64,000 bases of DNA, taken from IMG/VR virus record IMGVR_UViG_3300036770_003657, positions 335,797 to 399,796 of that record; one strand, written 5' to 3'. The notes beneath the pieces are model-generated. The model saw nothing but the letters and a program-made list of their open reading frames with translations, ran no database searches and was not told where the DNA came from. This document shows, piece after piece, positions 49,280-64,000 of the stretch. How positions within the stretch are numbered: position 1 is the first letter of the stretch; the number at the start of each line of letters is the position of its first letter. The position numbers were made by a program, and so were the translations under genes.

Positions 49280-50145
49280 AATCTTCCCCAACTATTTTCG
49301 CTCTTGCGTGCCTGTAGATCAAAGCCATTTGAACATAAACGTCGCTGACACATTATAGGATCTGTAGGCCAGTTTATATTGTCCATATATAAATTACCTA
49401 TTGATCCACCTTGCTCACACCATCCTCGGTACACGTCACCAAACTTATCTATTACAAATTGTTCAACTCCGGCCCAACACATATGTCCGTGATACTCGTT
49501 TAATCTATGTAACTTTTTATACTCAATTTGATCAACTATTTGTTCTTCACCTACATCTTTATCTCTGTAATAAAAATTTAATTGTTGTTCGCTGTACTGA
49601 TAATAGTCATTATTACCTTTAGTAAAATTTTTATACAATAATTGTATTTCAGGTGTATATCCTCTGACTTCTAGTAAGTCTTTTATCTTTATGATGTCAT
49701 TCCAATATTTGGGAGTAATCGGTAGTTTCACTGTAACATCTACATTTTTCTCTTTAAGTTTTTCTAATACAAAGATCAAGTGTTCAACTGGTAGGAAGTG
49801 TAGATGATAACTTATGTTTACTCTATTGAAAAATTTACCATACTGATCCCACCAACTAATTTCTCTACTTCCGTTGGTTTCTAAAACAATTCGTTTATTT
49901 GGATTTGGTATAGAATTATTTAATGCCCATTCTAGTCCTCTGAACACTGTGGGCTCACCACCTATTAGGCTTAATTCAAAACTATCAAAATGGTCATAGA
50001 CTTTGGCAAAGCCTCTGACAAATACTAAGGGATCTGGTAGGCCAATACTGCCAGACTTTAGTATGTCTGGACAGTATTCGCAGTTGAAATTACAATGATT
50101 GGTAAAGTTCCACTGTATTCTTATTGGTTGATATATGCCAGCCAA
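49276..50145 (-). CDS. Radical SAM protein with SPASM/twitch-like C-terminus
   Basis: CNFNCEYC, GGEPT, CWAG...GDVYRGWC...C....C. Confidence 0.88.
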   Translation of the reverse strand: MAGIYQPIRIQWNFTNHCNFNCEYCPDILKSGSIGLPDPLVFVRGFAKVYDHFDSFELSLIGGEPTVFRGLEWALNNSIPNPNKRIVLETNGSREISWWDQYGKFFNRVNISYHLHFLPVEHLIFVLEKLKEKNVDVTVKLPITPKYWNDIIKIKDLLEVRGYTPEIQLLYKNFTKGNNDYYQYSEQQLNFYYRDKDVGEEQIVDQIEYKKLHRLNEYHGHMCWAGVEQFVIDKFGDVYRGWCEQGGSIGNLYMDNINWPTDPIMCQRRLCSNGFDLQARKSENSWGRL

Positions 50146-50633
50146 GAGTCCTGCCTTACATTGAATGGTATTGCTCTACGCTTATTTACCAATTCAAAGT
50201 ATGCTGGCTTGTAGGGCTTGACCTTAGGCTTCATCCTAGTATCACTGCCCTTGGCTGCATTGCAGGGTCCACAGGCTGTGACAGTGTTATCGAACACAGT
50301 CTTGCCACCTTGGCTCACAGGCTTAACATGATCCAATGTACAGTCTTTTTTCTGTAGGTGTTTGTCACAGTATAGGCAAGTATAATTGTCTCTTAGGAAC
50401 ACATTGCTCTTACTGAATCTTACATAGCTTTTTGGCTTAGTATATTCTCTGAGCATGATAATACTGGGCACAAAGGTTTCCCAATTAACACTGCGTACAA
50501 TCCAATTCTCATACCATTCAATCACAGAAGCCTTATCCAATACCATATAGCGGATTGACTCTTGCCAATTAATTGTGCTAAGAGGAAGATAGTTTAAAGG
50601 TTGTCCGTCTGCGTTAAGAACTAGTGTGTCCAT
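50121..50633 (-). CDS. HNH endonuclease
   Basis: RDNYTCLYC, TLDHVKP..QGG, TACGPCNAAKG; TTGACT-17-TATAAT at 50656-50684. Confidence 0.92.
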   Translation of the reverse strand: MDTLVLNADGQPLNYLPLSTINWQESIRYMVLDKASVIEWYENWIVRSVNWETFVPSIIMLREYTKPKSYVRFSKSNVFLRDNYTCLYCDKHLQKKDCTLDHVKPVSQGGKTVFDNTVTACGPCNAAKGSDTRMKPKVKPYKPAYFELVNKRRAIPFNVRQDSWLAYINQ

Positions 50634-52585: not shown

Positions 52586-53407
52586 TTATTTATCGTAGTC
52601 TAACCATTCGTATAGATTCAGCCAACTACGACGACCTATAGTTTCTTTAAGGTGTTTTAGATCAGCCTGTGCATTATCTCTATAAAAGGGGCGTAATTCA
52701 GCATCTACGTCGTTATATTCTAAAGTGGCTCCTTCTTGTTCGGCTATGTATTCCGCTATGTCCATGTAACTATGATTGAGTCCAGTGCCTACATTCCATA
52801 TACCACTGCCCTTTACAGTATTGATAAAGTCCCAATGTAGTCGTACAACATCACCTACCCATACCCAATCACGTTTGATCTTATCTGCCCCACGCCATAC
52901 TGTGATCTTGCCTTCTTTACGAGCCTGTTGACGCCATTTGTGTAGGGCATTAGGGTCACTCTTAACATTTTGCCATTTACCATATACAGTGAAATACCTA
53001 AAACCCTGTACAAAACTACTATGACTTCGACTAAAAGCGTATCTATCAAACAAGTATTTGCTCCAAGCATAGGGTCCTTGTGGCACACAGGCAGCACCTT
53101 CTTCAAAGTTATTAGTATTGCCATATACTTTATGTGAACTAGCATATTGAAGATTAACTCCATGATGCTGACATTCATCTAATAGCCAATGACTAAAATC
53201 ATAGTTCTGTGCTAGTACAGTTTCAACATCAAGGGTATGCGTATCTGTTATGGCACCCAAATGTATGACCCAATCATAATGTCTAACTATAGGTCTGTTA
53301 ATAGGATCCCATTCATATCCATCTACATGTACACCTTCTTGTTTATGGAGAAAGGCACACATATTACGTCCTATAAAACCAAGATGCCCGGTGACCAATA
53401 TACGCAT
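52586..53407 (-). CDS. hldD: NAD-dependent epimerase, ADP-L-glycero-D-manno-heptose 6-epimerase-like
   Basis: LVTGHLGFIG, YASS, YAWSK (YxxxK), RYFTVYG, KRDWVWVGD; start moved to 53407. Confidence 0.7.
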   Translation of the reverse strand: MRILVTGHLGFIGRNMCAFLHKQEGVHVDGYEWDPINRPIVRHYDWVIHLGAITDTHTLDVETVLAQNYDFSHWLLDECQHHGVNLQYASSHKVYGNTNNFEEGAACVPQGPYAWSKYLFDRYAFSRSHSSFVQGFRYFTVYGKWQNVKSDPNALHKWRQQARKEGKITVWRGADKIKRDWVWVGDVVRLHWDFINTVKGSGIWNVGTGLNHSYMDIAEYIAEQEGATLEYNDVDAELRPFYRDNAQADLKHLKETIGRRSWLNLYEWLDYDK

Positions 53408-53424
53408 TTTACACCTCCTTGGTG

Positions 53425-53453
53425 TTGACATATACTTTAATATATAGTAGTAT
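53425..53453 (+). promoter_or_regulatory. Sigma70-type promoter at the strand switch
   Basis: TTGACA -17- TAGTAT. Confidence 0.55.
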
Positions 53454-53460
53454 TTACAAC

Positions 53461-53943
53461 ATGGACAAATATAAAGACTTTCCAGAAAAGCCAAGGCGTA
53501 TGACCGACGCTGAGGGTGAGGAATACTTCGGTCGAATTGTTAGGGCTATTGAACACTTTAATCCCACAATGATCGTGGGTGTGGCACGTACTGGTTTGAT
53601 ATATGCTACTTGGGTAAGCCAGGTATTAGCAATACGTGATATAGGTATCTACTACCCAGGTAAGGATAAATTATTAATGCCAAATATGAATCCAGAACGT
53701 GTGGCCTTTGTGGATGATAACACGGTCACTGGAGGTAGTTATCTCAAGTGTAAACAGTTAATGGCACGTGATTATCCACAAACTGAATTTGTTTGGGCAG
53801 TATTGTATACAGATTGGAATACTCCTGAACACATAAGAAATGAATTAATACAAGGGACTAGGCTTCCTTATTTTGCCGAGGAACCTTTTTGGGGTAGTAA
53901 GAAAATAAGCAAAGACTATGGAGTAAGATTTAGAGATGAGTAA
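53461..53943 (+). CDS. Type I phosphoribosyltransferase
   Basis: IVGVARTGL; VAFVDDNTVTGGS (PRPP loop). Confidence 0.8.
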   Translation: MDKYKDFPEKPRRMTDAEGEEYFGRIVRAIEHFNPTMIVGVARTGLIYATWVSQVLAIRDIGIYYPGKDKLLMPNMNPERVAFVDDNTVTGGSYLKCKQLMARDYPQTEFVWAVLYTDWNTPEHIRNELIQGTRLPYFAEEPFWGSKKISKDYGVRFRDE

Positions 53944-54370
53944 AGGCAGCAATTTAACAGCATTTGATTTGGATGGAGTATTCATTCCTGATTGTGACCA
54001 AATTCCAGATTTAGGTGATCACGAAGCCTATTTGAATTTGACTATGTATATGCAACCCGTATTCAAACCAGTAGGTGAATGGATCCTACTAACAGGTAGA
54101 CCAGCAGAATATGAGCACGTTACCAAAAGTTGGTTGCTCAAATATTTTACTAATCAACCCAAAATGATCCTTCATCAAAGAGATGCTGAAAAGGAAACTA
54201 ACGAAGAATACAAATTGCGTATGATTAAGGAACATGATATTGATGTCTATATAGAAAGTGATAAAAAAATCGTGGATCACTTAAAAGGTAATTTGGATGT
54301 GGATAAAAAGACTATACAGCATTTCAGCGAGTTCTGTGAGTTGTATTTGAACTACAACGCAGGAGCTTGA
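53936..54370 (+). CDS. HAD-superfamily phosphatase-like protein
   Basis: AFDLDGV, LLTGRP, K...IDVYIESD. Confidence 0.78.
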   Translation: MSKGSNLTAFDLDGVFIPDCDQIPDLGDHEAYLNLTMYMQPVFKPVGEWILLTGRPAEYEHVTKSWLLKYFTNQPKMILHQRDAEKETNEEYKLRMIKEHDIDVYIESDKKIVDHLKGNLDVDKKTIQHFSEFCELYLNYNAGA

Positions 54371-54395
54371 CAATATCTAAGTTTTCGCATATAAT
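54367..54395 (+). promoter_or_regulatory. Consensus sigma70 early promoter
   Basis: TTGACA (54367) -17- TATAAT (54390). Confidence 0.85.
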
Positions 54396-54423
54396 AGACT
54401 ATGGTTAACAAATAGGTGATTGT

Positions 54424-54675
54424 ATGCGAAAACTTGCCGCTTTTTTACTATCAATGAGCATTACTGGATGCTCTAGTATCCAATTTAAAGAGCCATTATG
54501 TCCTGGCACTAGAAGCTATGATGTACAACTCTGTAGGGGTGAAAAACCTTATATCATTCCTAATCCACCTGGATTCGCTTTTCAACAAGAAGCCAAATGC
54601 AACAAGTGTATAGACATAGATCAAAACTGTGTCTGGGGTGTACCACAACATTGTAAACCCAAATGGAGACAATGA
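54424..54675 (+). CDS. Cys-rich lipoprotein-like protein
   Basis: Lipobox-like ITGC; several Cys. Confidence 0.55.
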   Translation: MRKLAAFLLSMSITGCSSIQFKEPLCPGTRSYDVQLCRGEKPYIIPNPPGFAFQQEAKCNKCIDIDQNCVWGVPQHCKPKWRQ

Positions 54676-55043
54676 TGAAAATTACTGTGCGTAATCCATT
54701 ATATCCTATTCGTGATCGTTATTTCTTTGACATACCAGAGTTTAGGGAATATGAAGGTGTGGAAACTACGCTCAAACACATTGACAGCGTACAATACCTA
54801 TGCCTCACTACAGGCATAAAAGATTTTCCCGTTCGTGTAATTGATAGGAGTACGATAGTGAATAGCGAAAAACAACCACTTTTCGCCCTTGATGAATTTT
54901 TTGGTGTCACCGAACGTCTTAAGGTGGAAGGTAGTAAAGGTGCTGTATACGAACTAACTAAGACCAATGGCAAATGGGCCTGTACCTGTCCTGGTTTTGA
55001 ATACCGTAAGGATTGTAAGCATGTTAGAAACGCCGGAACATAA
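54672..55043 (+). CDS. SWIM zinc-finger protein
   Basis: VEGSKGAVY...WACTCPGF...CKHV. Confidence 0.8.
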   Translation: MMKITVRNPLYPIRDRYFFDIPEFREYEGVETTLKHIDSVQYLCLTTGIKDFPVRVIDRSTIVNSEKQPLFALDEFFGVTERLKVEGSKGAVYELTKTNGKWACTCPGFEYRKDCKHVRNAGT

Positions 55044-55269
55044 AGACCTATTGGGTCGTAAGGTTGGGGTTGGATCATTTGTGGCCTTTACCCAAAACAA
55101 TAGACTGTTCGTTGGTCGTGTAATAAAATTAAACAGACAAATGCTGCGTATTGAACGTATTAAACATACCAAATGGATGGCTGATCAGACCAATAAGTAT
55201 TCATATGATTGTGTGGTCATTCCAGATAAGGATGTGGACTTTTATATACTGAGGAATATTACAAAATGA
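55021..55269 (+). CDS. Hypothetical protein (SH3/KOW-like)
   Basis: DLLGRKVGVGSFVAF...GRVIK. Confidence 0.6.
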   Translation: MLETPEHKDLLGRKVGVGSFVAFTQNNRLFVGRVIKLNRQMLRIERIKHTKWMADQTNKYSYDCVVIPDKDVDFYILRNITK

Positions 55270-55466
55270 AAATGAGTAGCGTGGAAGTTGGCCTATTCAA
55301 ACTGCCTGGTGTAGTATTTGAGCGTGATGTTCTCACTCCAGAGAAAGTAGAACAGATCAATGCTTGGTGTGCGGAAAATAACTGCGGCAAGCAAATGACT
55401 GACCTACTTTGGAGTTTTAAAAAGCCCACACAGCGTGACATGTTCATACTACGGTGGAGTGAATAA
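55266..55466 (+). CDS. WFxLRW-family small protein
   Basis: Central AWC; ends RDMFILRWSE. Confidence 0.75.
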   Translation: MKMSSVEVGLFKLPGVVFERDVLTPEKVEQINAWCAENNCGKQMTDLLWSFKKPTQRDMFILRWSE

Positions 55467-55654
55467 TGTATACGATTAAGTCTGAGCACATCTTACTTCG
55501 TGCATCAACACACTATTATTCAGAAGTATGGCAGGGTGGTAAGTTAGGAATGCTAGATTGGCTTGATAAGGAGTTTGGTGCTAGAACAAATGACGGTGTT
55601 ATTTATTTTAAAACAGAAGCCAAGCGTAATTGGTTTGCTCTAAGATTCTCATGA
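55466..55654 (+). CDS. WFxLRW-family small protein
   Basis: Ends RNWFALRFS. Confidence 0.75.
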   Translation: MYTIKSEHILLRASTHYYSEVWQGGKLGMLDWLDKEFGARTNDGVIYFKTEAKRNWFALRFS

Positions 55655-55941
55655 GCGGATCCAGTTTAAAAAAAGTTGTGGATGACCTTTATCGTATACT
55701 TAATCGTAAGGCAAGATATTATTGGAGTGAATCTGGGCTAGAATTGAAACTAATTGCCGAAATGGATTGGGAAGATGGAACTGGTATCCACGCACCAGAT
55801 CAGCACGTAGTTGAACGTATAGCAGAATGGTGTTATAAGAATCGTTGTGGACGTCGTACTAGTTATGATACATTTAAGTTTCGTAATCGTAAACAAATTA
55901 CTTTGTTCCTACTACGTTGGGGTGAAGTAAAGGATGAGTAA
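55651..55941 (+). CDS. WFxLRW-family small protein
   Basis: EWC; ITLFLLRWG; ATGA start. Confidence 0.75.
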   Translation: MSGSSLKKVVDDLYRILNRKARYYWSESGLELKLIAEMDWEDGTGIHAPDQHVVERIAEWCYKNRCGRRTSYDTFKFRNRKQITLFLLRWGEVKDE

Positions 55942-56134
55942 GGATTGGCAGGGTTGGGAAATAGTTAGTATACAACAACCCGCTAATAGTCTAGTTGGCT
56001 GGAGTGAATGCTTGGCTTGGTGTGACCATACCCTAAAGCCTCATACCTATTACTATATGGGCGAGGGTGTGTTTACTTTTAAAAATGAATGTGATGCTAC
56101 ATGGTTTAAACTAAGGTGGGATAATGGAAATTAA
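55934..56134 (+). CDS. WFxLRW-family small protein
   Basis: AWC; DATWFKLRW. Confidence 0.75.
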   Translation: MSKDWQGWEIVSIQQPANSLVGWSECLAWCDHTLKPHTYYYMGEGVFTFKNECDATWFKLRWDNGN

Positions 56135-56285
56135 AAGACTAATGATTCCTTTGGATGATGATAGAATTGCCAGTTTGCTATTTAGGCGAGTCAACGATGG
56201 CAATGATTGGGTATGTGTGATGAACGATGAGTTTATGACAGATCTATCTGATTTATTGGAAGTAGAAGAACATACACTACAATGA
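56124..56285 (+). CDS. Small hypothetical protein (53 aa)
   Basis: Not in the track. MEIKRLMIPLDDDRIASLL...; coupled at both ends. Confidence 0.6.
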   Translation: MEIKRLMIPLDDDRIASLLFRRVNDGNDWVCVMNDEFMTDLSDLLEVEEHTLQ

Positions 56286-56542
56286 ACTACGACGACGTTA
56301 AATTCAATAACAAATTAGATGAGATGATAGAGCGAGCAGGTGGTCGTCTATATCTTGCTCACTTGGATCGTCCAGCACTAGAACGCTTTGTTAGAATAAT
56401 GCTGGAGGATATTGAAGAAGATATTAAAGGTTGGCGTGATAGTAAGGATGATAGTATGTATGGTGACTACTGGGAAGGCTATGCTCAAGGCTGTGCGGAT
56501 AGTATAGTAGCGGTGAGACTATGGGCACAAGACATAACCTAG
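56282..56542 (+). CDS. Hypothetical protein
   Basis: 86 aa; ATGA overlap. Confidence 0.7.
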   Translation: MNYDDVKFNNKLDEMIERAGGRLYLAHLDRPALERFVRIMLEDIEEDIKGWRDSKDDSMYGDYWEGYAQGCADSIVAVRLWAQDIT

Positions 56543-56796
56543 ATCACTTGCCCAGACAGGGGCAATATGAATTATTCATCAGTGCCAATCATATCTATTG
56601 TTTTGATGATCTTGATCATGTTAAATGGCCTAATAACGAGCAAACTCAGAGTTGGCTAGCCAAGCAAAATAGTGTACTATGTAGAGCATACATAACTCAA
56701 GATAATAACAAGCCCAGTGCTTATTATTTGGATCCTAAATTATATTTTATGTGGAAATTGGCTTGGAGTGAATATGCGAAACCGATCCGGATATAG
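56521..56796 (+). CDS. Diverged WFxLRW-family protein
   Basis: SWL; YFMWKLAWS; start uncertain. Confidence 0.55.
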   Translation: MGTRHNLDHLPRQGQYELFISANHIYCFDDLDHVKWPNNEQTQSWLAKQNSVLCRAYITQDNNKPSAYYLDPKLYFMWKLAWSEYAKPIRI

Positions 56797-56974
56797 TCTT
56801 CCTGATTATGCCTTATATCGTTATAAGTGGCAGTATAACGGCATAGCACCATTTGAGGAAATAAGCGATTGGTGTAGGAATAATCTTAAAGGCCATACTT
56901 ATATACCATATGAAACTATTTGGTTCAGTAATGAGCGGGACTATCATTGGTTTTTATTACGGTGGAGTTCATGA
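56774..56974 (+). CDS. WFxLRW-family small protein
   Basis: DWC; YHWFLLRWSS. Confidence 0.75.
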   Translation: MRNRSGYSLPDYALYRYKWQYNGIAPFEEISDWCRNNLKGHTYIPYETIWFSNERDYHWFLLRWSS

Positions 56975-57228
56975 AATATATAGAAGATCCTGACATCTGG
57001 TACAATCTACAGACACACTTTTCAAATAATTTTATTCCCCGCTTGGAGAATGATGATAAGGTTTGGGCAATGGCATTTAAACGGTGGCTAAAAGATCAAG
57101 GTGCTGACATTGAAATGAAATTGGGTTATAGATTAATTCGTAATAGTTTGGGCATAGCACCTCACTATGATCGATTGGTCTTTGAAGATGATCGAGATGC
57201 CACAATGTTTATATTGAGGTGGTCATGA
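56971..57228 (+). CDS. WFxLRW-family small protein
   Basis: RWL; DATMFILRWS. Confidence 0.78.
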   Translation: MKYIEDPDIWYNLQTHFSNNFIPRLENDDKVWAMAFKRWLKDQGADIEMKLGYRLIRNSLGIAPHYDRLVFEDDRDATMFILRWS

Positions 57229-57476
57229 AGCCAAGTGAATTACTGGCCATAGCAGAAAAATACTGGCTCACGGAGTATGATTTTAACAAGCCCGTAGCAC
57301 CGGATACGCCCTTTGTCACAGGTGACGGCCGCTATGATGCTATATTATATGACATGCTCGTTCAACATGGTGTAGAATTGATATTGAAACAGAGTAGACA
57401 TAGAAATTGGAAATTGGAAGATTACCGTGTGGTTGATAACAAAAAGTTTATGTGGTTTTTGATGAGGTGGTCATGA
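57225..57476 (+). CDS. WFxLRW-family small protein
   Basis: FMWFLMRWS. Confidence 0.78.
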   Translation: MKPSELLAIAEKYWLTEYDFNKPVAPDTPFVTGDGRYDAILYDMLVQHGVELILKQSRHRNWKLEDYRVVDNKKFMWFLMRWS

Positions 57477-57679
57477 AATTCCGTATGATCGATATGGGCT
57501 ATCGTCAGAGTCCCGACTATCCTTATAACTATAGGATTGAACTCTTTGATTATGGTTTCGAAGAACGCCGGCAGTTAAGTCTGTGGTTAAATGATCTTAA
57601 AATTCCCCATACCACAACTGGCAGTGTGATATACTTGGGCGAGAAATATGCTAATTGGTTTGCTTTGAGGTGGTCATGA
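57473..57679 (+). CDS. WFxLRW-family small protein
   Basis: LWL; ANWFALRWS. Confidence 0.78.
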   Translation: MKFRMIDMGYRQSPDYPYNYRIELFDYGFEERRQLSLWLNDLKIPHTTTGSVIYLGEKYANWFALRWS

Positions 57680-57894
57680 GTGAAAGAATTGATCATGTCA
57701 TTGACAAAAGAGGGTATGTGCTTATGGGAGATAGTAGGGGCATAGTCACACCATATGAACTAAGACAAGAGATTTATGAATGGGCTCAAAAGAATAACAT
57801 AGAAATAGAATACCATGGCAGTCTTGATAGAAAAGATCTATGGTATGTAAAAAACGATCAGCATCGTAATTGGTTTACTTTGAGGTGGTCATGA
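57676..57894 (+). CDS. WFxLRW-family small protein
   Basis: EWA; RNWFTLRWS. Confidence 0.78.
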   Translation: MSERIDHVIDKRGYVLMGDSRGIVTPYELRQEIYEWAQKNNIEIEYHGSLDRKDLWYVKNDQHRNWFTLRWS

Positions 57895-58232
57895 AAATAC
57901 AGGGAATAAAAAAACTTAGGGATGATCAAAAGATTTTTGTGTTGGGCAAGATTACTCCGCATGCGTTTCGTCAATATATGGATCGCTACTCAGATTTTGG
58001 TTGGGCTATGGAAACGAGAGCACATCATGCTATTAAACGTTTAATAAAACATGAGCATATGGAATTATACCAATGGTTGTTGAGTCAAAATTGTCAAACA
58101 ACCAATTGGATTGATGATGAAATATTTTCACTTCCATATCAATTCCGTAATCAGGTAGATTATTTTGATTGGGGTATAGGGTTTAAGTTTAATGATCCTG
58201 CAGAAACTTGGTTTACTTTGAGGTGGTCATGA
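57891..58232 (+). CDS. WFxLRW-family small protein
   Basis: QWL; ETWFTLRWS. Confidence 0.78.
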   Translation: MKIQGIKKLRDDQKIFVLGKITPHAFRQYMDRYSDFGWAMETRAHHAIKRLIKHEHMELYQWLLSQNCQTTNWIDDEIFSLPYQFRNQVDYFDWGIGFKFNDPAETWFTLRWS

Positions 58233-58462
58233 TGACTAGGTTAGTTTGTTTGCCTGCTCACGAAGGACCTGTGCTAAATGCTGCTATTTGGTTGAGACAG
58301 CACTTAAACATACCCCAGTATGAAACTATGGAAAGTCAGTTTGAAGAATATTTTAATTGTCGGGTGGTAAGAGAGCCACCACACGATTTGGTCTATGGTA
58401 AAATATTTGCTGTGTTTGACTGTGAGCGGGATGCTAATTGGTTCGTATTGAGGTGGTCGTGA
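58229..58462 (+). CDS. WFxLRW-family small protein
   Basis: IWL; DANWFVLRWS. Confidence 0.78.
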   Translation: MMTRLVCLPAHEGPVLNAAIWLRQHLNIPQYETMESQFEEYFNCRVVREPPHDLVYGKIFAVFDCERDANWFVLRWS

Positions 58463-58662
58463 GACAATTGAAGAAAGAACTATGGCCCTGTAGTGTTAGA
58501 GTAAACTTGCCACCCGAGGATATAACACCTGTTGAACTATGGTTAGCCCTACAGTTTGGTGCATTAAAGGATAGATGGAATGTGATTTATAGATTCAATC
58601 ATACAGAGTACTATTTTCGTAATCAAAAAGACGCTAATTGGTTCGCATTGAGGTGGGCGTAA
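58459..58662 (+). CDS. WFxLRW-family small protein (GTG start)
   Basis: LWL; DANWFALRWA; GTGA overlap. Confidence 0.75.
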   Translation: MRQLKKELWPCSVRVNLPPEDITPVELWLALQFGALKDRWNVIYRFNHTEYYFRNQKDANWFALRWA

Positions 58663-58925
58663 TGGCAGAAACTATACGCAAGTTCGCTGAACAAAGGAAA
58701 GTAAAGAACTGGGACCACACCACTGCCAAAAATGTACAAGAAGAATACCAAGCCTCTGGCTACTATCCTGTGCAGTTAGGCATGCTGGGCCTAGTGGGTG
58801 AATGGCAGGAATGCCATCGGTGGTGTCGTGACTATATAGGTGAGGATCACTATAGTTGGACAGGATCAACATTTTGGTTTGAAACAGAGCAAGCGGCTAT
58901 GTGGTTCGCATTGAGGTGGGCATGA
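58662..58925 (+). CDS. WFxLRW-family small protein
   Basis: RWC; AAMWFALRWA. Confidence 0.78.
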   Translation: MAETIRKFAEQRKVKNWDHTTAKNVQEEYQASGYYPVQLGMLGLVGEWQECHRWCRDYIGEDHYSWTGSTFWFETEQAAMWFALRWA

Positions 58926-59128
58926 GTAAAAGAGATTGGTGTAATATCGCTGTTAGTGTGCCTTGGCGTAGCCCTGGACAATGGCGTGACCTGCGTATTT
59001 GGCTACAGGAAAATGTCAACGATATGGACTACGATGCTGCCGGTGTAGATTTACAGCGTTACGATCAAAGAGTATTTTATTTTGCTAGACCGAAGGATGC
59101 AATGTGGTTCGCACTGAGATGGAGTTAA
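58922..59128 (+). CDS. WFxLRW-family small protein
   Basis: IWL; DAMWFALRWS. Confidence 0.78.
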   Translation: MSKRDWCNIAVSVPWRSPGQWRDLRIWLQENVNDMDYDAAGVDLQRYDQRVFYFARPKDAMWFALRWS

Positions 59129-59129
59129 T

Positions 59130-59519
59130 ATGATTGATAAAACAGTAGAAGAGTTCTGTAAGAGATATGAAGCAAGAATAGTACGCACCGGCCAGTATCA
59201 TCGTAGGGCAGAACCGAGTCCTTGGCGTATACCTGGCTATTATGAAACAAGTACCATAAAAAATGTCGACTTCTTCAATATTACTGAAGTGCCTATAACA
59301 AGTATTACCCTGCCAGAAGATCGGCTTGGTGCATTGGTAGAACACGAACAGCGTGTATCTGATTTTGTAGAACCTTTCCACCGAGGCCATGTTGGCAAAT
59401 ATCAACACATAGAAGCCCATATAGCAGAACAAGAAATTGAATGTCGCCTGCGTCATACTAATCCTGCACTGAAGAAGGCCTGGGACAATTATCAAATGCT
59501 ATTGAGGCTGGTAAGATGA
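59130..59519 (+). CDS. Hypothetical protein
   Basis: 129 aa; ends NPALKKAWDNYQMLLRL. Confidence 0.7.
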   Translation: MIDKTVEEFCKRYEARIVRTGQYHRRAEPSPWRIPGYYETSTIKNVDFFNITEVPITSITLPEDRLGALVEHEQRVSDFVEPFHRGHVGKYQHIEAHIAEQEIECRLRHTNPALKKAWDNYQMLLRLVR

Positions 59520-59746
59520 AGTGTGGCTGTTATGAGTGTGTAAAGAATGATTTACTTCTAGTTATGAGCACTATTATAGTGTGTGGTACCTGTGGTAATA
59601 AACGCTGTCCACATGCTACTAATCATTTACTGCCCTGTACCAATAGCAATGAGCCAGGACAATTAGGATCAAGGTATGGCACTTGGCCACATCCTGATCT
59701 GCCTTTTTATGAATTCATATCTAAAGGTCAAAAGGATAAAATCTAA
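59516..59746 (+). CDS. Cys-rich zinc-binding phage protein
   Basis: CGCYEC...CGTCGNKRCPHATNH...CTNSNEPGQ. Confidence 0.7.
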   Translation: MKCGCYECVKNDLLLVMSTIIVCGTCGNKRCPHATNHLLPCTNSNEPGQLGSRYGTWPHPDLPFYEFISKGQKDKI

Positions 59747-59756
59747 TATATAGTGT

Positions 59757-59975
59757 ATGAGCATACAAGTCACTGTGCCTAATCAACATACTGGTCAACT
59801 CATAGACATGGTAAGAGAATTAAAAAAACAGGGACTAGAACAAGGGCGGGATTTCGATTTTAGGTTTATGCCTGCTGTATATGATTTTGCTAACAATCAT
59901 AGTGAGCCAAGGCATGCGGTATTTGTTTTCTACGAGGAAAAATGGGCAACTTGGTTCACACTAAAATGGCTTTGA
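59757..59975 (+). CDS. WFxLRW-family small protein
   Basis: WATWFTLKWL. Confidence 0.75.
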   Translation: MSIQVTVPNQHTGQLIDMVRELKKQGLEQGRDFDFRFMPAVYDFANNHSEPRHAVFVFYEEKWATWFTLKWL

Positions 59976-60181
59976 ACAATTTAGGCTATCCTGATATATA
60001 TCCTGGTTGGCATTACTTACATAAGAAGTATAACATAAATCCTAAAGAAACAGACATTTATGAAATGTTTGCTTGGTGTGATGATAACATTGGTGAGTTT
60101 GGTGTAGACTGGGATTGGCACATTGATACCTTTTGCTTTCGTAGAGCCAAGGATGCTACAATATTTGGACTGAGGTGGTAA
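59972..60181 (+). CDS. WFxLRW-family small protein
   Basis: AWC; DATIFGLRW; TTGA overlap start (alternative ATG at 59966). Confidence 0.72.
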   Translation: MNNLGYPDIYPGWHYLHKKYNINPKETDIYEMFAWCDDNIGEFGVDWDWHIDTFCFRRAKDATIFGLRW

Positions 60182-60182
60182 T

Positions 60183-60485
60183 ATGGCTGGATTTAAAAGT
60201 AAACGAGCATTGTCATCAAGTAAGATGTTTAATATGCCTATGGTCATGGCTGACCCCAGTGTAAACATATTATATCGTACACCGGATGGTTGGTACACTG
60301 TGGCCTTTAACAAGGAAACTATAGACTGGTTCCGTAAAACCTATGATGACAAACAAGGAATAACCTGGCGTGAGACAGATGATGACAGTTATATCATATA
60401 TCGTCGTAGGTTAGAACTAACTGAAGAAATGGTCACTCTACTAAAACTAAAATACAGTGACACGCTGGATAATACAGATATATAA
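60183..60485 (+). CDS. Diverged WFxLRW-family protein
   Basis: DWF; VTLLKLKYS. Confidence 0.55.
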   Translation: MAGFKSKRALSSSKMFNMPMVMADPSVNILYRTPDGWYTVAFNKETIDWFRKTYDDKQGITWRETDDDSYIIYRRRLELTEEMVTLLKLKYSDTLDNTDI

Positions 60486-60491
60486 TACATC

Positions 60492-60776
60492 ATGTTAAAC
60501 AAAGTTAAAGCCTTTTGGCACCATAGTTATACCACAGATCGTAAGGCCTTCTATTTAGAAATGATGGCCAGTATATGTGTAGTAAGCACTACATTTGCCA
60601 TTGCTTGGATGGCCTATCATCCACCAATGCACTATATCTATCCTGTAAGTTTTGTAGGTGCTGTATTCAGTATCCTAGCATATTGGCGTAGACAATTGGC
60701 CTGGCCATTTTTACTTACTTGTTATTTTGCCTGTATTCATGTATTTGGATTTGGGCGTGCATTGGGGTATTGGTAA
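60492..60776 (+). CDS. Three-TM membrane protein
   Basis: Three hydrophobic segments. Confidence 0.7.
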   Translation: MLNKVKAFWHHSYTTDRKAFYLEMMASICVVSTTFAIAWMAYHPPMHYIYPVSFVGAVFSILAYWRRQLAWPFLLTCYFACIHVFGFGRALGYW

Positions 60777-61591
60777 TGCCTATAGCCATACAATTACCTG
60801 AAGTATTGAGTCGTGAGGAATTCGTTAATATGATTCCTAAAACAGCTCGCACTTTGGAAATAGGACCATATAACAACCCTACTCTTAAGCGTAGTGAATT
60901 TCCCAATGTCAAATATATGGATATGTTCACCGCAGAACAAATACTAGAGGATAAAGAACGTTATACTAATATAGGTGAGATGCCAGATCAAATAGATATT
61001 TTAGTTGATCCTGAACAGCGTCCTACATTTACTACTGATCTTAAGTTTGATTTTATCTACAGTGCTCATAACATTGAACATCATCCTGATATAGTATACC
61101 ATTTAAATGAAATAGCTAGCCTAGCACAAGGCATGCACAGTAGATACTTTCTCACTGTCCCAGATAAAAGATATTGTTTTGATTATTATCAACATGCTAG
61201 TGAATATACTGATATGATTGAAGCATATTTAGAACAGCGTCGCACTCATAGTTTTGGCAGCTATCTACGTCATACTGTATATGCTACACATAATAACATA
61301 TATGAGCATTGGATGGGTAGTCATGGATTGGATCCTAGAAGTATAGAAATTAATATTAATCATGCTACCACAATAAGACATAAAATTGATAATGCCAGAG
61401 ATGAACGTCATCGTAAGTTTGCTGACATACATGCTTGGTATTTTACCAATGAAAGTTTTATGTACACAATTAATATGTTGAATCAACTAGGCCTACAGCC
61501 TTGGAGGGTAGATGCTGTGACTCCTCCACAACATATGACACCAGAGTTCCACGCCGTTATGAGTCTAACACGCTATGTCAACAGAAGTTGA
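60776..61591 (+). CDS. Class I SAM-dependent methyltransferase-like protein
   Basis: LEIGPYNNP, YMD, FDFIYSAHNIEH, LTVPDKRYCFD; start moved to the TAATG overlap. Confidence 0.7.
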   Translation: MPIAIQLPEVLSREEFVNMIPKTARTLEIGPYNNPTLKRSEFPNVKYMDMFTAEQILEDKERYTNIGEMPDQIDILVDPEQRPTFTTDLKFDFIYSAHNIEHHPDIVYHLNEIASLAQGMHSRYFLTVPDKRYCFDYYQHASEYTDMIEAYLEQRRTHSFGSYLRHTVYATHNNIYEHWMGSHGLDPRSIEININHATTIRHKIDNARDERHRKFADIHAWYFTNESFMYTINMLNQLGLQPWRVDAVTPPQHMTPEFHAVMSLTRYVNRS

Positions 61592-61880
61592 AATTAAACT
61601 AACAGAAGGCATCACCCCTATGTATAAACTCATAGAGGGTGAATGCTATGACTGGATTGTATTGGCCCGTGTACCAATTGGTAATGAAGATCCAACCTAC
61701 TTTGCCCAAGTCTATTTAGAAAGCTTTAAAAAAAGTGACTATGGACGCTGGTGCATAAAACATATCAAAGATATAGAATATAAGTACAAACCAGGCAGTA
61801 AAAGTATATTTGACTTTGAGCTATTTGGTTATATCAAACCAATTAAGCTAACTGAAATGCGTATAAGATTCCAGCAGTGA
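61575..61880 (+). CDS. Hypothetical protein (possibly diverged array family)
   Basis: GRWC; LTEMRIRFQ. Confidence 0.6.
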   Translation: MSTEVEIKLTEGITPMYKLIEGECYDWIVLARVPIGNEDPTYFAQVYLESFKKSDYGRWCIKHIKDIEYKYKPGSKSIFDFELFGYIKPIKLTEMRIRFQQ

Positions 61881-62131
61881 AACGTCACTATAATTTCTTT
61901 TTTACAATGCTTAAGGCATTTGCGGATTATAAAAAAGAATATGACATTAAAGAAGGTGCTATGACAGCAAAATTCTTTACATATATGGAAGAACGTTATG
62001 GCATTGAAATATTATTAGAAGCACATACTGGTTATATGCGAGCTGCATATAATATCAAAGACCTTGCTAAACACAGCCTGTTTATATTAAAATACGGTGA
62101 TTATTTACAGGACACATATTATAATGATTAA
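61877..62131 (+). CDS. Diverged WFxLRW-family protein
   Basis: HSLFILKYG. Confidence 0.55.
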   Translation: MKRHYNFFFTMLKAFADYKKEYDIKEGAMTAKFFTYMEERYGIEILLEAHTGYMRAAYNIKDLAKHSLFILKYGDYLQDTYYND

Positions 62132-62486
62132 AACTATTAACTCAGGAAAATATATTACCGTACAACAAGCATATACTAGTCAACCATATATTAGCCCAGG
62201 ATCATCAGGCGCTGGTATGATACGGTGGAATCCCAATATGCAGTGTTTTGAAGTTAATGATGGTGCAGTATGGCAACAATATACAATGGCCAGCCCTACT
62301 ATTGAATTGAATACGGAAGCACAAGAACTGTTGGACTATGTTAGAAAACTACGTGATAGACAAAGACTAGTAGAACAAAATCCTAGTTTAGAAAAGGCTC
62401 TAGAGGCTATTACTCGTGCTGAGGATAACTTTGATACTTTGGCCAAACTAGTTGATACCAAACCAATAGATTATCATCATGTCTAA
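62124..62486 (+). CDS. Hypothetical protein
   Basis: GAGMIRWNPNMQCFEVNDGAVW; C-terminal helices. Confidence 0.7.
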   Translation: MIKTINSGKYITVQQAYTSQPYISPGSSGAGMIRWNPNMQCFEVNDGAVWQQYTMASPTIELNTEAQELLDYVRKLRDRQRLVEQNPSLEKALEAITRAEDNFDTLAKLVDTKPIDYHHV

Positions 62487-62799
62487 TTATTGGGTAAAAA
62501 TAGAAGGCGATGAAGCTGTAGAATATCGTAAAGTACACGTTCATACAATCACTATGGGTGATGTAGAAGATCCTGAAATATATATAGCAGGACCCATATT
62601 AGAATGGCAACAAAGTGAAGTGGGTCGTTGGATAATGGAACATAGTGCTGAACAGCCTGTATTTCATAGATGGGCTGATCCTCACCATTATGGCTATACC
62701 TATAAAATCACTGCTGTACTACGAGGCAGGGATTATACTTATTGGACATTGAAGTGGGGCAAGGCGACCAATCACAAAGATATCTTGAAGAGTATTTAG
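62479..62799 (+). CDS. Diverged WFxLRW-family protein
   Basis: GRWI; YTYWTLKWG. Confidence 0.6.
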   Translation: MSNYWVKIEGDEAVEYRKVHVHTITMGDVEDPEIYIAGPILEWQQSEVGRWIMEHSAEQPVFHRWADPHHYGYTYKITAVLRGRDYTYWTLKWGKATNHKDILKSI

Positions 62800-63023
62800 G
62801 AGCCTTCCACATATATCACGTGGATGACGACAGTGCTGAACGCATTAGTCTATGGTTGGCTCAGCAGGGTAGACAATATAGAGATTGGATAGTCATACAC
62901 GGTAGGATGTATGAAAGCAACACTTTTGTTCATATCAAAAGCCATAAGGTATGTTTGTTGTTCGAACTAGCATTTAGTCAATCAATAATACGCAGATTTG
63001 TTGACAGGAAAACAATGCCGTAG
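62742..63023 (+). CDS. Diverged WFxLRW-family protein
   Basis: LWL; CLLFELAFS; start uncertain. Confidence 0.45.
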   Translation: MDIEVGQGDQSQRYLEEYLGAFHIYHVDDDSAERISLWLAQQGRQYRDWIVIHGRMYESNTFVHIKSHKVCLLFELAFSQSIIRRFVDRKTMP

Positions 63024-63029
63024 TATACT
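63001..63029 (+). promoter_or_regulatory. Sigma70-type promoter
   Basis: TTGACA -17- TATACT. Confidence 0.7.
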
Positions 63030-63038
63030 TGCTGTATT

Positions 63039-63455
63039 ATGAATACACGAGAACCTTTATTCAGCGTGACCGCACGTGACTGTGAATGGTCTTATACCAG
63101 AGGTACAGGAGCAGGTGGTCAAAAACGAAACAAGACATCCAGTGCTGTGCATTGTAGTCATCGTCCGTCAGGTGCTCACGGATATAGTGAAGCCAGTCGT
63201 AGCCAATTGGACAATCGTCGTGATGCCTTTCGTAAAATGGGAGAGAGTGCTAAATTCCAAACTTGGGCTAAGATGGAAATGATGCGGCGTACTGGTGAAG
63301 CCTTGGAGATTGAGCGTTGGCTGGAAAATGAAATGCGTAAGGTTAAAATAGAGATTAAGGTGGATGGTCGTTGGCGTGAAGTTAAACCTCATATGCTGGT
63401 GGATGATCCAGATGATTTTAGAATTGAATACTTAGCGGAGATGGGCGATGAATAA
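63039..63455 (+). CDS. Class I peptide release factor GGQ-domain protein (ArfB/PrfH-like)
   Basis: YTRGTGAGGQKRNKTSSAVHCSHRPSG...SRSQLDNRRDAFRKM. Confidence 0.88.
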   Translation: MNTREPLFSVTARDCEWSYTRGTGAGGQKRNKTSSAVHCSHRPSGAHGYSEASRSQLDNRRDAFRKMGESAKFQTWAKMEMMRRTGEALEIERWLENEMRKVKIEIKVDGRWREVKPHMLVDDPDDFRIEYLAEMGDE

Positions 63456-63669
63456 TGAAAGTCAAGCAAGATGGTATGCTATAAGGTTAATCTTAGTATA
63501 CCTCAGCATCATATCAATCTTTGCTGTTATAGCATATATTGATCTATTTTGGTTGTTGGTTGTACTTGTGTCTATGTTTGTGTTTATGGTAACAGGTGCC
63601 ATATATAGTGAAGCATATGATCGTAAACTTATGGAGTTAGAAAGAAATGACCAATCAAGAACTAATTAA
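63448..63669 (+). CDS. Two-TM membrane protein
   Basis: Two hydrophobic segments. Confidence 0.65.
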   Translation: MNNESQARWYAIRLILVYLSIISIFAVIAYIDLFWLLVVLVSMFVFMVTGAIYSEAYDRKLMELERNDQSRTN

Positions 63670-63784
63670 TACTCTGCGTAAGGCCAGTGCGAGCCAAGAT
63701 AACATAGCATTGAAGATGTTATTGATTTATGCTGCTGAAAGAATGGAAAGACTACACCTTGCTCTATATGGAGATACAGAATGA
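63647..63784 (+). CDS. Small hypothetical protein (45 aa)
   Basis: Not in the track. MTNQELINTLRKAS...; ATGA overlap with the next gene. Confidence 0.5.
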   Translation: MTNQELINTLRKASASQDNIALKMLLIYAAERMERLHLALYGDTE

Positions 63785-63969
63785 ACGAACGAATTAAAGA
63801 ACTTGCTGAACAGGCTGAACAGTGGGCAGATAATCAAAACTTTTATGCTAGCGATTACCAAGATTATATGATGGAAAAGTTCGCCGAGTTGATTGTCAGG
63901 GAATGTGCCAGCAAGGTCACCCGCAATGAAGCATTGAATATCTTTGAACATTTCGGAGTTGAAGAATGA
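63781..63969 (+). CDS. Conserved phage hypothetical protein
   Basis: MNERIKELAEQA...EKFAELIVREC...HFGVEE. Confidence 0.75.
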   Translation: MNERIKELAEQAEQWADNQNFYASDYQDYMMEKFAELIVRECASKVTRNEALNIFEHFGVEE

Positions 63970-64000
63970 CAACGATTAAAAATCCATTTCCCGGTGTTAC

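What the first reader, a model, noticed from the sequence alone, without database searches (positions are those of the whole stretch)
55266..63023. Array of small paralogous genes whose 3' end encodes both a conserved peptide and the next gene's RBS
Seen in sequence: 16 clear and about 5 diverged ORFs of ~60-115 aa have unrelated-looking bodies but share a central W-[CL] and a C-terminal F-x4-5-(D)A-x-W-F-x-L-[RK]-W-S/A. Ten are consecutive (56774-59128). The L-R-W-S-stop codons read TTGAGGTGGTCATGA. This contains the Shine-Dalgarno-like GAGGTG and the overlapping ATGA stop/start, with only 3 nt between GAGGTG and ATG. A consensus sigma70 promoter (54367-54395) lies upstream. Inference: each gene is a plug-in cassette that supplies translational coupling for whatever follows and a ~25-nt homology for recombination. 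This would make an integrase-free expandable array of early effectors (host takeover or anti-defence) sharing one small fold with variable surfaces.
Basis: partly seen in the sequence, partly recalled or inferred. Interest (0 to 1): 0.85.

Follow-up and report, generated by a model that had tools for sequence, protein, structure and literature searches.

The report
Shuffling array of small phage genes
A roughly 400-kb uncultured freshwater phage carries a one-promoter string of small related genes whose shared last codons also form the ribosome-binding site and start codon of the next gene, and related phages carry the same genes in different orders and numbers.

Summary
Sixteen genes between 55266 and 60181 belong to one family of 62-113-aa proteins, and two or three more are probable diverged members. 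Ten members are consecutive (56774-59128). All end in ...WFxLRW(S).

The family is unnamed: Pfam, PHROGs, NCBIfam and PDB give no match. It is large, with 943 clusters at 50% identity, all from uncultured phages.

The dual-coding claim holds. At the motif, Arg is AGG in 92% of members when a start codon follows within -1 to +6 nt. It is 42% otherwise, against a 13% background. This AGG creates GAGG 5 nt upstream of an ATG that overlaps the TGA stop.

The cassette claim also holds. Orthologues with 75-97% amino-acid identity occur in other phages in permuted order. Homology blocks are cassette-sized and start and end in the junction. Close relatives differ by whole-cassette indels flanked by a perfect 21-nt junction repeat.

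Three points are not shown:
- that the motif causes the recombination;
- that the genes are expressed early;
- that they act in host takeover or anti-defence.

The bodies are not unrelated. They share a predicted beta-alpha-beta-beta-alpha core. The closest known parallel is PeSL-mediated modular shuffling in T4-type phages, so this is a new variant of a known kind.

The parts
54367..54395 (+). Perfect sigma70-type promoter (TTGACA-17-TATAAT) heading the polycistronic block
   Evidence: 12/12; the next + strand sites scoring 11/12 or better are at 60457-60486 and 63001-63029; one search shows the sequence
54424..55269 (+). Three leading non-family small genes (54424-54675; 54663-55043 with a SWIM zinc finger; 55021-55269)
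   Evidence: conserved in the syntenic relatives L166/L169
55266..55466 (+). Family member, 66 aa (...MFILRWSE)
   Evidence: hhalign 98.0%; 88% identical orthologue in L166-L173
55466..55654 (+). Family member, 62 aa (...WFALRFS)
   Evidence: 97.8%
55651..55941 (+). Family member, 96 aa (...LFLLRWGEVKDE)
   Evidence: 98.9%
55934..56134 (+). Family member, 66 aa (...WFKLRWDNGN)
   Evidence: 99.2%
56124..56542 (+). Two non-family genes embedded in the array (56124-56285, 56282-56542)
   Evidence: no match; the orthologue of 56282 sits at a different array position in L182
56521..56796 (+). Probable diverged member, 91 aa (...MWKLAWSEYAKPIRI)
   Evidence: hhalign 82% when its orthologues are added; 6% as a single sequence
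56774..56974 (+). Family member A, 66 aa; first of ten consecutive
   Evidence: 99.0%
56971..57228 (+). Family member B, 85 aa
   Evidence: 96.7%
57225..57476 (+). Family member C, 83 aa; the most divergent clear member
   Evidence: 86.6% over the last 20 residues; AF2 model has helix, beta-hairpin and C-terminal helix; orthologues of 73-88% identity in many metagenomes
57473..57679 (+). Family member D, 68 aa
   Evidence: 96.9%; absent between C and E in L179, and placed before C in L181
57676..57894 (+). Family member E, 72 aa
   Evidence: 97.6%
57891..58232 (+). Family member F, 113 aa, with an N-terminal extension
   Evidence: 92.8%
58229..58462 (+). Family member G, 77 aa
   Evidence: 97.0%
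58459..58662 (+). Family member H, 67 aa, GTG start overlapping the TGA stop
   Evidence: 98.5%; 97% identical orthologue in L179
58662..58925 (+). Family member I, 87 aa; used for the structure model
   Evidence: 99.5%; AF2 pLDDT 84, pTM 0.73, beta-alpha-beta-beta-alpha core
58922..59128 (+). Family member J, 68 aa; last of ten consecutive
   Evidence: 99.0%; lies before C in L179 and L183
57197..58926 (+). Run of eight junction repeats (33-nt unit ...TGGTTxxxxTTGAGGTGGTCATGA) at the ends of members B to I
   Evidence: family D1
59130..59746 (+). Two non-family genes (129 aa; 76-aa Cys-rich)
59757..59975 (+). Family member, 72 aa (...WFTLKWL)
   Evidence: 96.2%; 87% identical orthologue in L166
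59942..60181 (+). Family member, 79 aa (...IFGLRW)
   Evidence: 98.6%
61575..61880 (+). Possible diverged member, 101 aa
   Evidence: 19-41% only
62479..62799 (+). Probable diverged member, 106 aa (...YWTLKWGKATNHKDILKSI)
   Evidence: 67%, E 5e-5; HMM E 0.009
63039..63455 (+). RF-1-domain (GGQ) gene; conserved right-hand neighbour of such arrays in related phages
   Evidence: PF00472; 88-93% identical orthologues just downstream of arrays in L179, L180 and L183

Best explanation
The region is a translationally coupled, single-promoter block of small genes in a hypervariable part of a ~400-kb uncultured freshwater phage. Its other genes suggest a cyanophage.

Most genes in the block are paralogues of one very large, unnamed family of 55-115-aa phage proteins. 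They share a compact predicted beta-alpha-beta-beta-alpha core, and the last helix of that core ends in WFxLRW(S).

The codons for L-R-W-x-stop are held as TTG AGG TGG NNA TGA. The rare AGG codon creates a GAGG(TG) Shine-Dalgarno site. The A of the last codon plus the TGA stop creates an overlapping ATG. Each gene therefore ends with the ribosome-binding site and start codon for whatever gene comes next.

The same 13-24 nt closes nearly every cassette. A crossover or template switch between any two junctions therefore removes, duplicates, inserts or reorders whole genes without breaking a reading frame or its translation signal. The array gains, loses and permutes cassettes without a dedicated recombinase.

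Status of each step:
- Shown: family membership, nucleotide-level selection on the junction, cassette-sized mosaicism, and indels bounded by the junction.
- Inferred: that the junction homology is the recombination substrate, that the block is one early transcript, and that the proteins are variable-surface binders acting on host targets.
For: Family.
- A1 profile: 943 representative clusters with E<=1e-3, nearly all 50-116 aa with the motif at the C-terminus.
- 16 clear members in the window.
- AF2 model: pLDDT 84, pTM 0.73.
- The only structural neighbours are uncharacterized proteins of uncultured phages.

Dual coding, in loci that were not retrieved by the DNA motif.
- AGG is 55/60 of Arg codons at the motif when a start lies at -1 to +6 nt, against 5/12 otherwise (Fisher p 3e-4). 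Background is 13%.
- The larger set gives 78-83% against 23-50%, with a 9% background. TTG is 70% against a 22% background.
- The last codon ends in A in 52/56 ATGA overlaps, while its amino acid takes 10 different values.
- GAGG-N5-ATG matches the spacing used elsewhere in the phage.

Single transcription unit. There is a perfect promoter at 54367. No comparable + strand promoter lies before 60457, and only one weak terminator-like site lies on that strand (59342, inside a non-family gene).

Shuffling.
- Syntenic relatives have ~400 bp where the window has 3.6 kb, 56119-59763.
- Orthologues of cassettes A, C-H and J (58-97% aa identity) occur in the orders A-J-x-C-E-F-x-G-...-H (L179), D-C-E (L181) and J-E-x-C-x-G (L183).
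- Homology blocks of 75-92% nt identity (85-92% to the closest relative, L179) are cassette-sized. They mostly start 2-32 nt (most often 13-23) before the preceding stop and end at their own stop.
- Eight to ten of 23 non-redundant clean indels between relatives with at least 85% identical flanks lie at family junctions. Six of them show 16-35 nt of overlapping homology, for example one-cassette indels flanked by the perfect repeat TTTATATTGAGGTGGTCATGA.
- Paralogue pairs with identical 21-nt junctions have bodies as dissimilar as any other pair.
Against: - Any precise whole-cassette indel in such an array must look as if it is flanked by the motif, so breakpoint position alone does not prove motif-mediated recombination.
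- Non-family genes in the arrays also move (56282 in L182).
- Clean indels with only 6-13 nt of overlap occur in related loci that lack the family (L145/L149). General microhomology recombination plus selection could therefore produce much of the pattern.
- 13-24 nt is short for homologous recombination.
- Within-genome homogeneity of free junction positions is modest and is confounded by genome codon bias.
- The second model (57225) has lower confidence (pLDDT 76.5). It did not retrieve the same structural neighbours.
- There are no expression data, no host and no functional evidence.
Confidence: 0.7

Rival explanations
1. This is an ordinary tandem paralogue family in an ordinary coupled operon. 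The junction is conserved only because the C-terminal helix and the downstream ribosome-binding site are each under selection. Cassette-level mosaicism comes from the general illegitimate or microhomology recombination of hypervariable phage regions, filtered by selection for intact genes. The motif plays no causal part.
For: - Non-family genes also change position.
- Clean indels with short overlaps occur in loci without the family.
- The S-PM2 ORFanage has the same ATGA-overlapped small-gene architecture without this family.
- ATGA overlaps with an upstream Shine-Dalgarno site are universal in phage operons (established knowledge).
Against: - Six family-junction indels show 16-35 nt of perfect or near-perfect overlap. 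Indels outside the arrays show no overlap or 6-13 nt, with one exception: a 69-nt overlap ~120 nt from a family junction.
- Blocks of 75-92% nt identity begin inside the preceding junction in nearly every case.
- Identical junctions join bodies that are otherwise unrelated at the nucleotide level.
Confidence: 0.22
2. The C-terminal WFxLRWS is a peptide signal in its own right (targeting, packaging, degradation or partner docking). This would be analogous to the capsid-targeting sequence shared by the otherwise diverse T-even internal proteins. The array would then be a repertoire of cargo proteins sent to one destination.
For: - The motif is the most conserved part and always lies at the extreme C-terminus.
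- T-even internal proteins are a precedent for diverse proteins that share only a short terminal motif (PMC3012670).
- Some relatives fuse a gp23 N-terminal fragment to the domain.
Against: - In the model the motif is the second half of a well-packed helix with pLDDT 90-95. W, F, L and W behave as core residues.
- Homology extends over the whole ~55-aa domain, not just the tail.
Confidence: 0.07
3. The repeats are a non-coding dispersed DNA element, and the small ORFs are chance reading frames.
For: A 33-nt DNA repeat family is detectable at the nucleotide level.
Against: - All copies lie on one strand, each ending an ORF of 60-115 aa.
- The frame shifts by -1 at each ATGA.
- The profile aligns over the whole domain.
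- There are hundreds of diverged homologues with conserved hydrophobic positions.
- Orthologues show 73-97% amino-acid identity across samples.
Confidence: 0.01

Closest known systems
PeSL (promoter-early stem-loop) mediated modular shuffling in T4-type phages (Arbiol et al. 2010, PMC2839356; Comeau et al. 2014, PMC4122927)
   Same: - Short conserved expression signals flank small genes of unknown function in hyperplastic regions.
- Indels, replacements and reordering between related phages have their breakpoints in the repeated signal.
- Each moved gene brings its own expression signal.
- No dedicated recombinase is needed.
   Different: - PeSLs are intergenic, about 100 bp, and act on transcription (a sigma70-like promoter plus a terminator).
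- Here the repeat is 13-33 nt, lies inside the coding sequence (the last helix of the protein) and acts on translation (Shine-Dalgarno site plus overlapping start).
- There are no promoters or terminators between cassettes.
- The cassettes are homologous to one another.
T-even internal proteins sharing a capsid-targeting sequence (PMC3012670, citing Repoila et al. 1994)
   Same: A polymorphic locus of small, highly diverse phage proteins that share a short conserved terminal coding motif. At least one member is an anti-restriction protein.
   Different: - That motif is N-terminal, is a cleaved targeting peptide, and the bodies are unrelated.
- Here the motif is C-terminal, is part of the fold, and doubles as the next gene's ribosome-binding site.
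- That the targeting-sequence DNA serves as a recombination site is my recollection and was not checked here.
'ORFanage' region of cyanophage S-PM2 (Puxty et al. 2015, PMC4503421)
   Same: A ~10-kb run of about 33 small genes of unknown function behind a host-like early promoter. Many have ATGA overlaps. The region is dispensable, its relatives are enriched in freshwater metagenomes, and synteny is rarely conserved.
   Different: None of the S-PM2 ORFs matches the family profile or carries the LRW tail. The authors considered PeSL-type shuffling unlikely there.
Integron gene-cassette arrays
   Same: Promoterless cassettes are read from one upstream promoter, and the array grows, shrinks and reorders by whole cassettes.
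   Different: No integrase is present and there is no attC-like imperfect inverted repeat at the junctions. The junction is coding sequence, and recombination would be homologous rather than site-specific.
Tandem gene amplification ('accordion') in viruses, e.g. tifA amplification in T4 (PMC9391042)
   Same: Copy-number change of small accessory genes by recombination between short repeats, under host-defence pressure.
   Different: Those are recent identical copies of one gene. Here the paralogues are ancient (~20-30% identity) and only the junction is alike. Only the abstract of that paper was seen.

Membership tests
PeSL regulatory cassettes | Each repeat carries a strong sigma70-like early promoter | tested here: not met
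   the only + strand sites of 11/12 or better in 53000-64000 are at 54367, 60457 and 63001; none lies at the cassette junctions
PeSL regulatory cassettes | Each repeat carries a stem-loop terminator | tested here: not met
   one weak + strand terminator-like site (59342), inside a non-family gene; no inverted repeats at the junctions
PeSL regulatory cassettes | Indels and replacements between related phages have breakpoints in the repeat | tested here: met
Integron cassette array | Adjacent tyrosine-recombinase integrase (IntI) | tested here: not met
   no integrase domain among the flanking genes of the window or of the syntenic relatives
Integron cassette array | attC imperfect inverted repeat at each cassette boundary | tested here: not met
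   no inverted repeats at the junctions; the junction is a 13-33-nt direct repeat inside coding sequence
Integron cassette array | Promoterless cassettes expressed from a common upstream promoter | tested here: inconclusive
   one search is consistent with this (a single perfect promoter, none internal), but there are no transcript data
Translationally coupled operon (stop-start overlap) | The start codon of gene n+1 overlaps or abuts the stop of gene n | tested here: met
   ATGA, GTGA or TAATG at the junctions; the start lies at -1 in 56/93 to 489/736 members
Translationally coupled operon (stop-start overlap) | A Shine-Dalgarno site inside the 3' end of gene n at functional spacing | tested here: met
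   GAGG lies 5 nt before the ATG, and the AGG codon is enriched only when a start follows
Translationally coupled operon (stop-start overlap) | Translation of gene n+1 depends on translation of gene n | not testable with these tools
   needs reporter assays
T-even internal proteins (CTS family) | A conserved N-terminal capsid-targeting sequence cleaved by the prohead protease | tested here: not met
   the N-termini are variable and the conserved motif is C-terminal
Any curated protein family (Pfam, PHROGs, NCBIfam, PDB) | A significant profile or structure match | tested here: not met
   nothing at or near threshold
S-PM2 ORFanage ORFs | Sequence homology to the S-PM2 ORF017-050 products | tested here: not met
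   best HMM E-value 0.07; no LRW tails

The most novel reading that the evidence does not exclude
The junction is more than a by-product. A coding motif has been co-opted as structural helix, ribosome-binding site and recombination site all at once. This would create a recombinase-free gene-cassette system. With it, large freshwater phages would assemble and exchange a combinatorial repertoire of small binders on one scaffold, aimed at host defence or takeover targets. Such a system would be a translational counterpart of integrons and PeSLs.
Probability: 0.3. Interest if true: 0.8.

Novelty: new variant of a known kind. Interest (0 to 1): 0.62.

Why it matters
Most genes of large environmental phages are small and unnamed, and how such gene sets turn over is poorly understood.

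This case has four useful features:
- The family is very large. It has at least 943 clusters at 50% identity and forms arrays of up to about 30 genes in 12 kb.
- It can be recognised by a simple tail motif.
- It carries a built-in rule for staying expressed wherever a cassette lands.
- Its cassettes are demonstrably reshuffled between related phages.

Together these give a tractable system for asking how phage accessory repertoires diversify. They also give a clean natural example of selection on synonymous sites for a second, non-coding function. Finally, they provide a ready list of hundreds of variants of one small scaffold to screen for host targets.

Tried and rejected
- Serine compensation. 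I tested whether members lacking AGG compensate with an AGY serine codon after Trp, which would make GGAG. The difference was not significant (29% against 19%, p 0.16).
- Read-through of the TGA stops into a polyprotein. Rejected: each ATGA shifts the frame by -1, so read-through would not enter the next gene. Long ORFs elsewhere read normally in the standard code.
- Homologues in cultured phages. tblastn of two members against 50,697 phage records gave nothing. A third query matched only through its gp23-like N-terminus.
- S-PM2 ORFanage. No family members.
- Agrobacterium phage Atu_ph07. It gave one structural hit. Its first 50 kb hold only one weak profile hit (E 4e-4) and no LRW tail. The rest of that genome was not scanned.
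- Megablast of the region against phage records. No match.
- The search for related loci with the family alignment. It failed because no 7-10-column stretch was conserved enough, so a DNA pattern was used instead.
- Fold search with the second model (57225).
- Within-genome homogenisation of junctions. Significant in permutation tests, but the effect is small and not separable from genome-specific codon bias. I do not rely on it.

Full report
1. WHAT IS THERE

On the + strand from 54424 to 63023 lies an almost gap-free run of about 32 small genes. A strict tail pattern, W[FY]x[LM][RK][WF], occurs 12 times in all six frames of the 64-kb window. All 12 are on this strand between 55631 and 59952, and each lies 1-4 codons before a stop.

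An 18-sequence alignment shows three shared elements:
- a central W followed by C or L;
- a short F-x-F strand;
- a terminal (D)A-x-W-F-x-L-R-W-S.

Compared with a 124-sequence family profile, 16 genes are clear members with hhalign probability 87-99.5%. Among the diverged candidates:
- 56521 is probable (82% with its orthologues added), and so is 62479 (30-67%);
- 61575 is possible;
- 60183, 61877 and 62742 are not supported;
- 56124, 56282, 59130 and 59516 are unrelated genes embedded in the array.

The profile aligns over 40-59 columns in most members. The bodies are therefore diverged homologues (about 20-30% identity), not unrelated sequences.

2. THE JUNCTION

The exact string TTGAGGTGGTCATGA occurs at four junctions. 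Seven junctions match it with at most two mismatches, where shuffles give 0.05. GAGGTGGTCATGA is identical at five consecutive junctions. A 33-nt junction unit has ten copies.

A perfect TTGACA-17-TATAAT promoter lies at 54367-54395. The next + strand sites of 11/12 or better are at 60457 and 63001. There is essentially no terminator-like site in between. The block therefore looks like one transcript, although this is inferred.

3. WHERE IT COMES FROM

The window is the last 64 kb of a 399,796-bp IMG/VR contig (L121). It has no close relative among 50,697 deposited phage records.

The rest of the window carries these genes:
- Hsp70;
- both ribonucleotide reductase subunits;
- heme oxygenase and a bilin-reductase-like gene;
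- a fatty-acid desaturase;
- a 4109-aa ORF that includes a phycobilisome-protein domain.

These point to a large freshwater cyanophage, which is an inference. At least one related contig comes from a sample labelled as a freshwater metagenome. Related arrays contain fragments resembling the N-terminal part of the T4 major capsid protein gp23, which suggests a T4-related lineage. I did not verify this for the window's phage.

4. SIZE AND STATUS OF THE FAMILY

- The family profile finds 943 representative clusters (50% identity) at E<=1e-3 among 1.84 billion proteins. Nearly all are 50-116 aa and end at the motif.
- All named members are called 'hypothetical protein', apart from one evident mislabel, and all carry viral labels.
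- Pfam, PHROGs, NCBIfam and PDB sequence searches give nothing.
In those loci the tail motif is always on one strand and next to a stop, with up to 31 copies in 11.6 kb (L102).
- No member was found in cultured phages, nor in the S-PM2 'ORFanage'.

5. FOLD

AlphaFold2 on member 58662-58922 with the family alignment gives pLDDT 84 and pTM 0.73. The core runs strand 35-38, helix 41-59, strands 64-67 and 70-73, helix 76-86. The LRW tail is the end of the last helix and falls in the most confident part of the model. The nearly invariant W, F, F, L and W behave as core residues.

No solved structure matches (best E 0.66). The only neighbours among predicted viral structures are uncharacterized proteins of uncultured phages, plus one weak hit in Agrobacterium phage Atu_ph07.

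The most divergent clear member, 57225, gives a weaker model (pLDDT 76.5). It shows the same helix, beta-hairpin and C-terminal helix order. A common fold is well supported for most members and only tentative for this one.

6. IS THE TAIL ALSO THE NEXT GENE'S RIBOSOME-BINDING SITE?

I built a family HMM and scanned all ORFs in the fetched loci.

Larger set, excluding members ascertained by the DNA pattern:
- Arg is AGG in 78% when the next start overlaps as ATGA.
- Arg is AGG in 83% when the start lies 2-6 nt downstream.
- It is only 23% when the next start lies upstream of the motif, and 50% when no start is near.
- Background in the bodies of the same genes is 9% AGG.
- Leu is TTG in 70%, against a 22% background.

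Clean replicate, using only loci retrieved by protein identity or by a neighbouring gene:
- AGG is 55/60 when a start follows and 5/12 otherwise (Fisher p 3e-4). Background is 13%.
- In ATGA overlaps the last codon ends in A in 52/56 cases, while its amino acid takes ten different values. That position is fixed by the start codon, not by the protein.

Lys variants point the same way: AAG is 47% when coupled and 24% when not.

LRW is kept with other codons where no gene follows, so the peptide is selected in its own right. Both levels of constraint are real.

The spacing is not odd. Counted from the GAGG core it is 5 nt, equivalent to the GGAG-N5-6-ATG seen at other genes of this phage.

7. DO CASSETTES MOVE, AND WHERE ARE THE BREAKPOINTS?

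(a) Lineage-specific content. Syntenic relatives (L166-L173, 75-82% nt identity in the flanks) keep the genes on both sides. They have about 400 bp where the window has 3.6 kb (56119-59763), a stretch that includes the ten consecutive members.

(b) Permuted order. Orthologues of those cassettes occur in other phages, again just upstream of an RF-1-domain gene, but in different orders. The window has A-B-C-D-E-F-G-H-I-J. The relatives have:
- L179: A-J-x-C-E-F-x-G-(five others)-H;
- L181: D-C-E;
- L182 and L183: J-E-(gp23-like fusion)-C-x-G-H'.
Identities for cassettes C-H and J are mostly 75-97% aa. A is 58-62%, and H' is a more distant copy at about 50%.

(c) Block boundaries. At the DNA level the shared blocks are 75-92% identical (85-92% to the closest relative, L179) and cassette-sized. 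Of 19 blocks of at least 200 nt, nearly all start 2-32 nt (most often 13-23) before the preceding gene's stop and end within a few nt of their own stop.

(d) Indels between close relatives. Among 23 non-redundant clean indels between relatives with at least 85% identical flanks, eight to ten lie at family junctions. Six of these have overlapping homology of 16-35 nt. Examples are one-, three- and six-cassette indels flanked by the perfect 21-nt repeat TTTATATTGAGGTGGTCATGA.

(e) Junctions versus bodies. Paralogue pairs with identical 21-nt junctions have bodies no more alike than other pairs. Identical junctions are therefore not leftovers of recent whole-gene duplication.

None of them is met.

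8. LIMITS

- In an array where every cassette ends alike, any precise cassette indel will appear flanked by the motif. Position alone cannot show that the motif is the recombination substrate.
- Non-family genes in the arrays also move (56282 in L182).
- Related loci without the family show clean indels with only 6-13 nt of overlap (L145/L149).
- The junction homology (13-24 nt, up to 33 nt with mismatches) is short. The PeSL authors note that T4 recombination needs only small (<50 bp) patches (PMC2839356).
- Timing of expression and protein function are not addressed by any result here.

9. COMPARISON WITH WHAT IS KNOWN

The closest described mechanism is PeSL-mediated modular shuffling in T4-type phages. 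There, ~100-bp intergenic promoter-terminator repeats flank small genes of unknown function and serve as exchange points (PMC2839356, PMC4122927).

The present case shares the logic: a repeated expression signal that travels with each gene and marks safe exchange points. It fails the defining PeSL features. There is no promoter and no stem-loop, and the repeat is not intergenic. Instead it is translational and lies inside the coding sequence.

The array resembles an integron only in being a promoterless cassette array. It resembles the T-even internal proteins only in sharing a short terminal motif (PMC3012670). The S-PM2 ORFanage has a similar architecture but is not homologous (PMC4503421).

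10. VERDICT

This is an unnamed but very large phage protein family with a demonstrably dual-use junction and demonstrable cassette-level reshuffling. It is a new variant of a known kind of phage genome plasticity.

Noticed in passing
window 3891-5112 (-), 44760-45461 (-), 18706-31035 (-): Cyanophage-type auxiliary genes are present: heme oxygenase, a ferredoxin-dependent bilin-reductase-like gene and a fatty-acid desaturase. A 4109-aa ORF has an Mtd_N N-terminus and a phycobilisome-protein domain (aa 1732-1812). Together with Hsp70 and the RNR genes, these suggest a ~400-kb freshwater cyanophage, larger than the T4-like cyanophage isolates I recall (a size comparison from memory).
   Followed up: partly
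window 63039-63455 (+); L179 10665-11096; L181 3911-4285; L183 3664-4080: A small RF-1-domain (GGQ peptidyl-tRNA hydrolase type) gene lies immediately downstream of these arrays in several related phages, so it is a conserved anchor next to a hypervariable block. The orthologues in L179, L180 and L183 are 88-93% identical to the window's copy; L181's copy gave no match in that comparison. Its role next to a long series of termination-reinitiation junctions is unexplained.
   Followed up: partly
P0149; L182 5221-5574; L183 699-1052: A recurrent subfamily of ~115-160 aa has an N-terminal part that matches the start of the T4 gp23 major capsid protein profile (E 8e-11), followed by the family domain. 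It sits inside arrays, between cassettes E and C. It could be a capsid-gene fragment captured by cassette recombination or a functional fusion.
   Followed up: partly
P0093, P0010: Some homologues carry two family domains, or a duplicated tail motif, in one ORF. This is what loss of a junction stop or an unequal exchange within the motif would give.
   Followed up: no
window 54379-54435: A 24-nt inverted repeat (83% complementary, 9-nt spacer) spans the -10 box of the perfect promoter and the start codon of the first gene. It could be an operator or a leader structure.
   Followed up: no
L184 (Synechococcus phage S-PM2, 5786-15450 of AJ630128): The unrelated S-PM2 ORFanage genes also overlap as ATGA. 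At least ten junctions read ATGACTnAC, that is, a shared Met-Thr-(Asp/Asn/Tyr) start. This may be a different conserved junction in a different small-gene array.
   Followed up: no
window 56774-59128: Because every junction is an ATGA (or GTGA, or TAATG) overlap, the reading frame steps back by one base at most genes and cycles through all three frames along the array.
   Followed up: yes
L178 (Agrobacterium phage Atu_ph07, about 29.3-29.8 kb, - strand): There is one weak family-profile hit (E 4e-4) in the first 50 kb of this cultured 490-kb phage, plus a structural hit to its 60-aa protein A0A2L0UZW8 (probability 0.92). This may be a distant cultured relative of the family. The remaining 440 kb were not scanned.
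   Followed up: partly
window 50121-50633 (-) and L166-L173: An HNH endonuclease gene overlaps the end of a radical-SAM gene in the conserved left flank. It is truncated in one relative (141 aa against 170 aa in L167).
   Followed up: no
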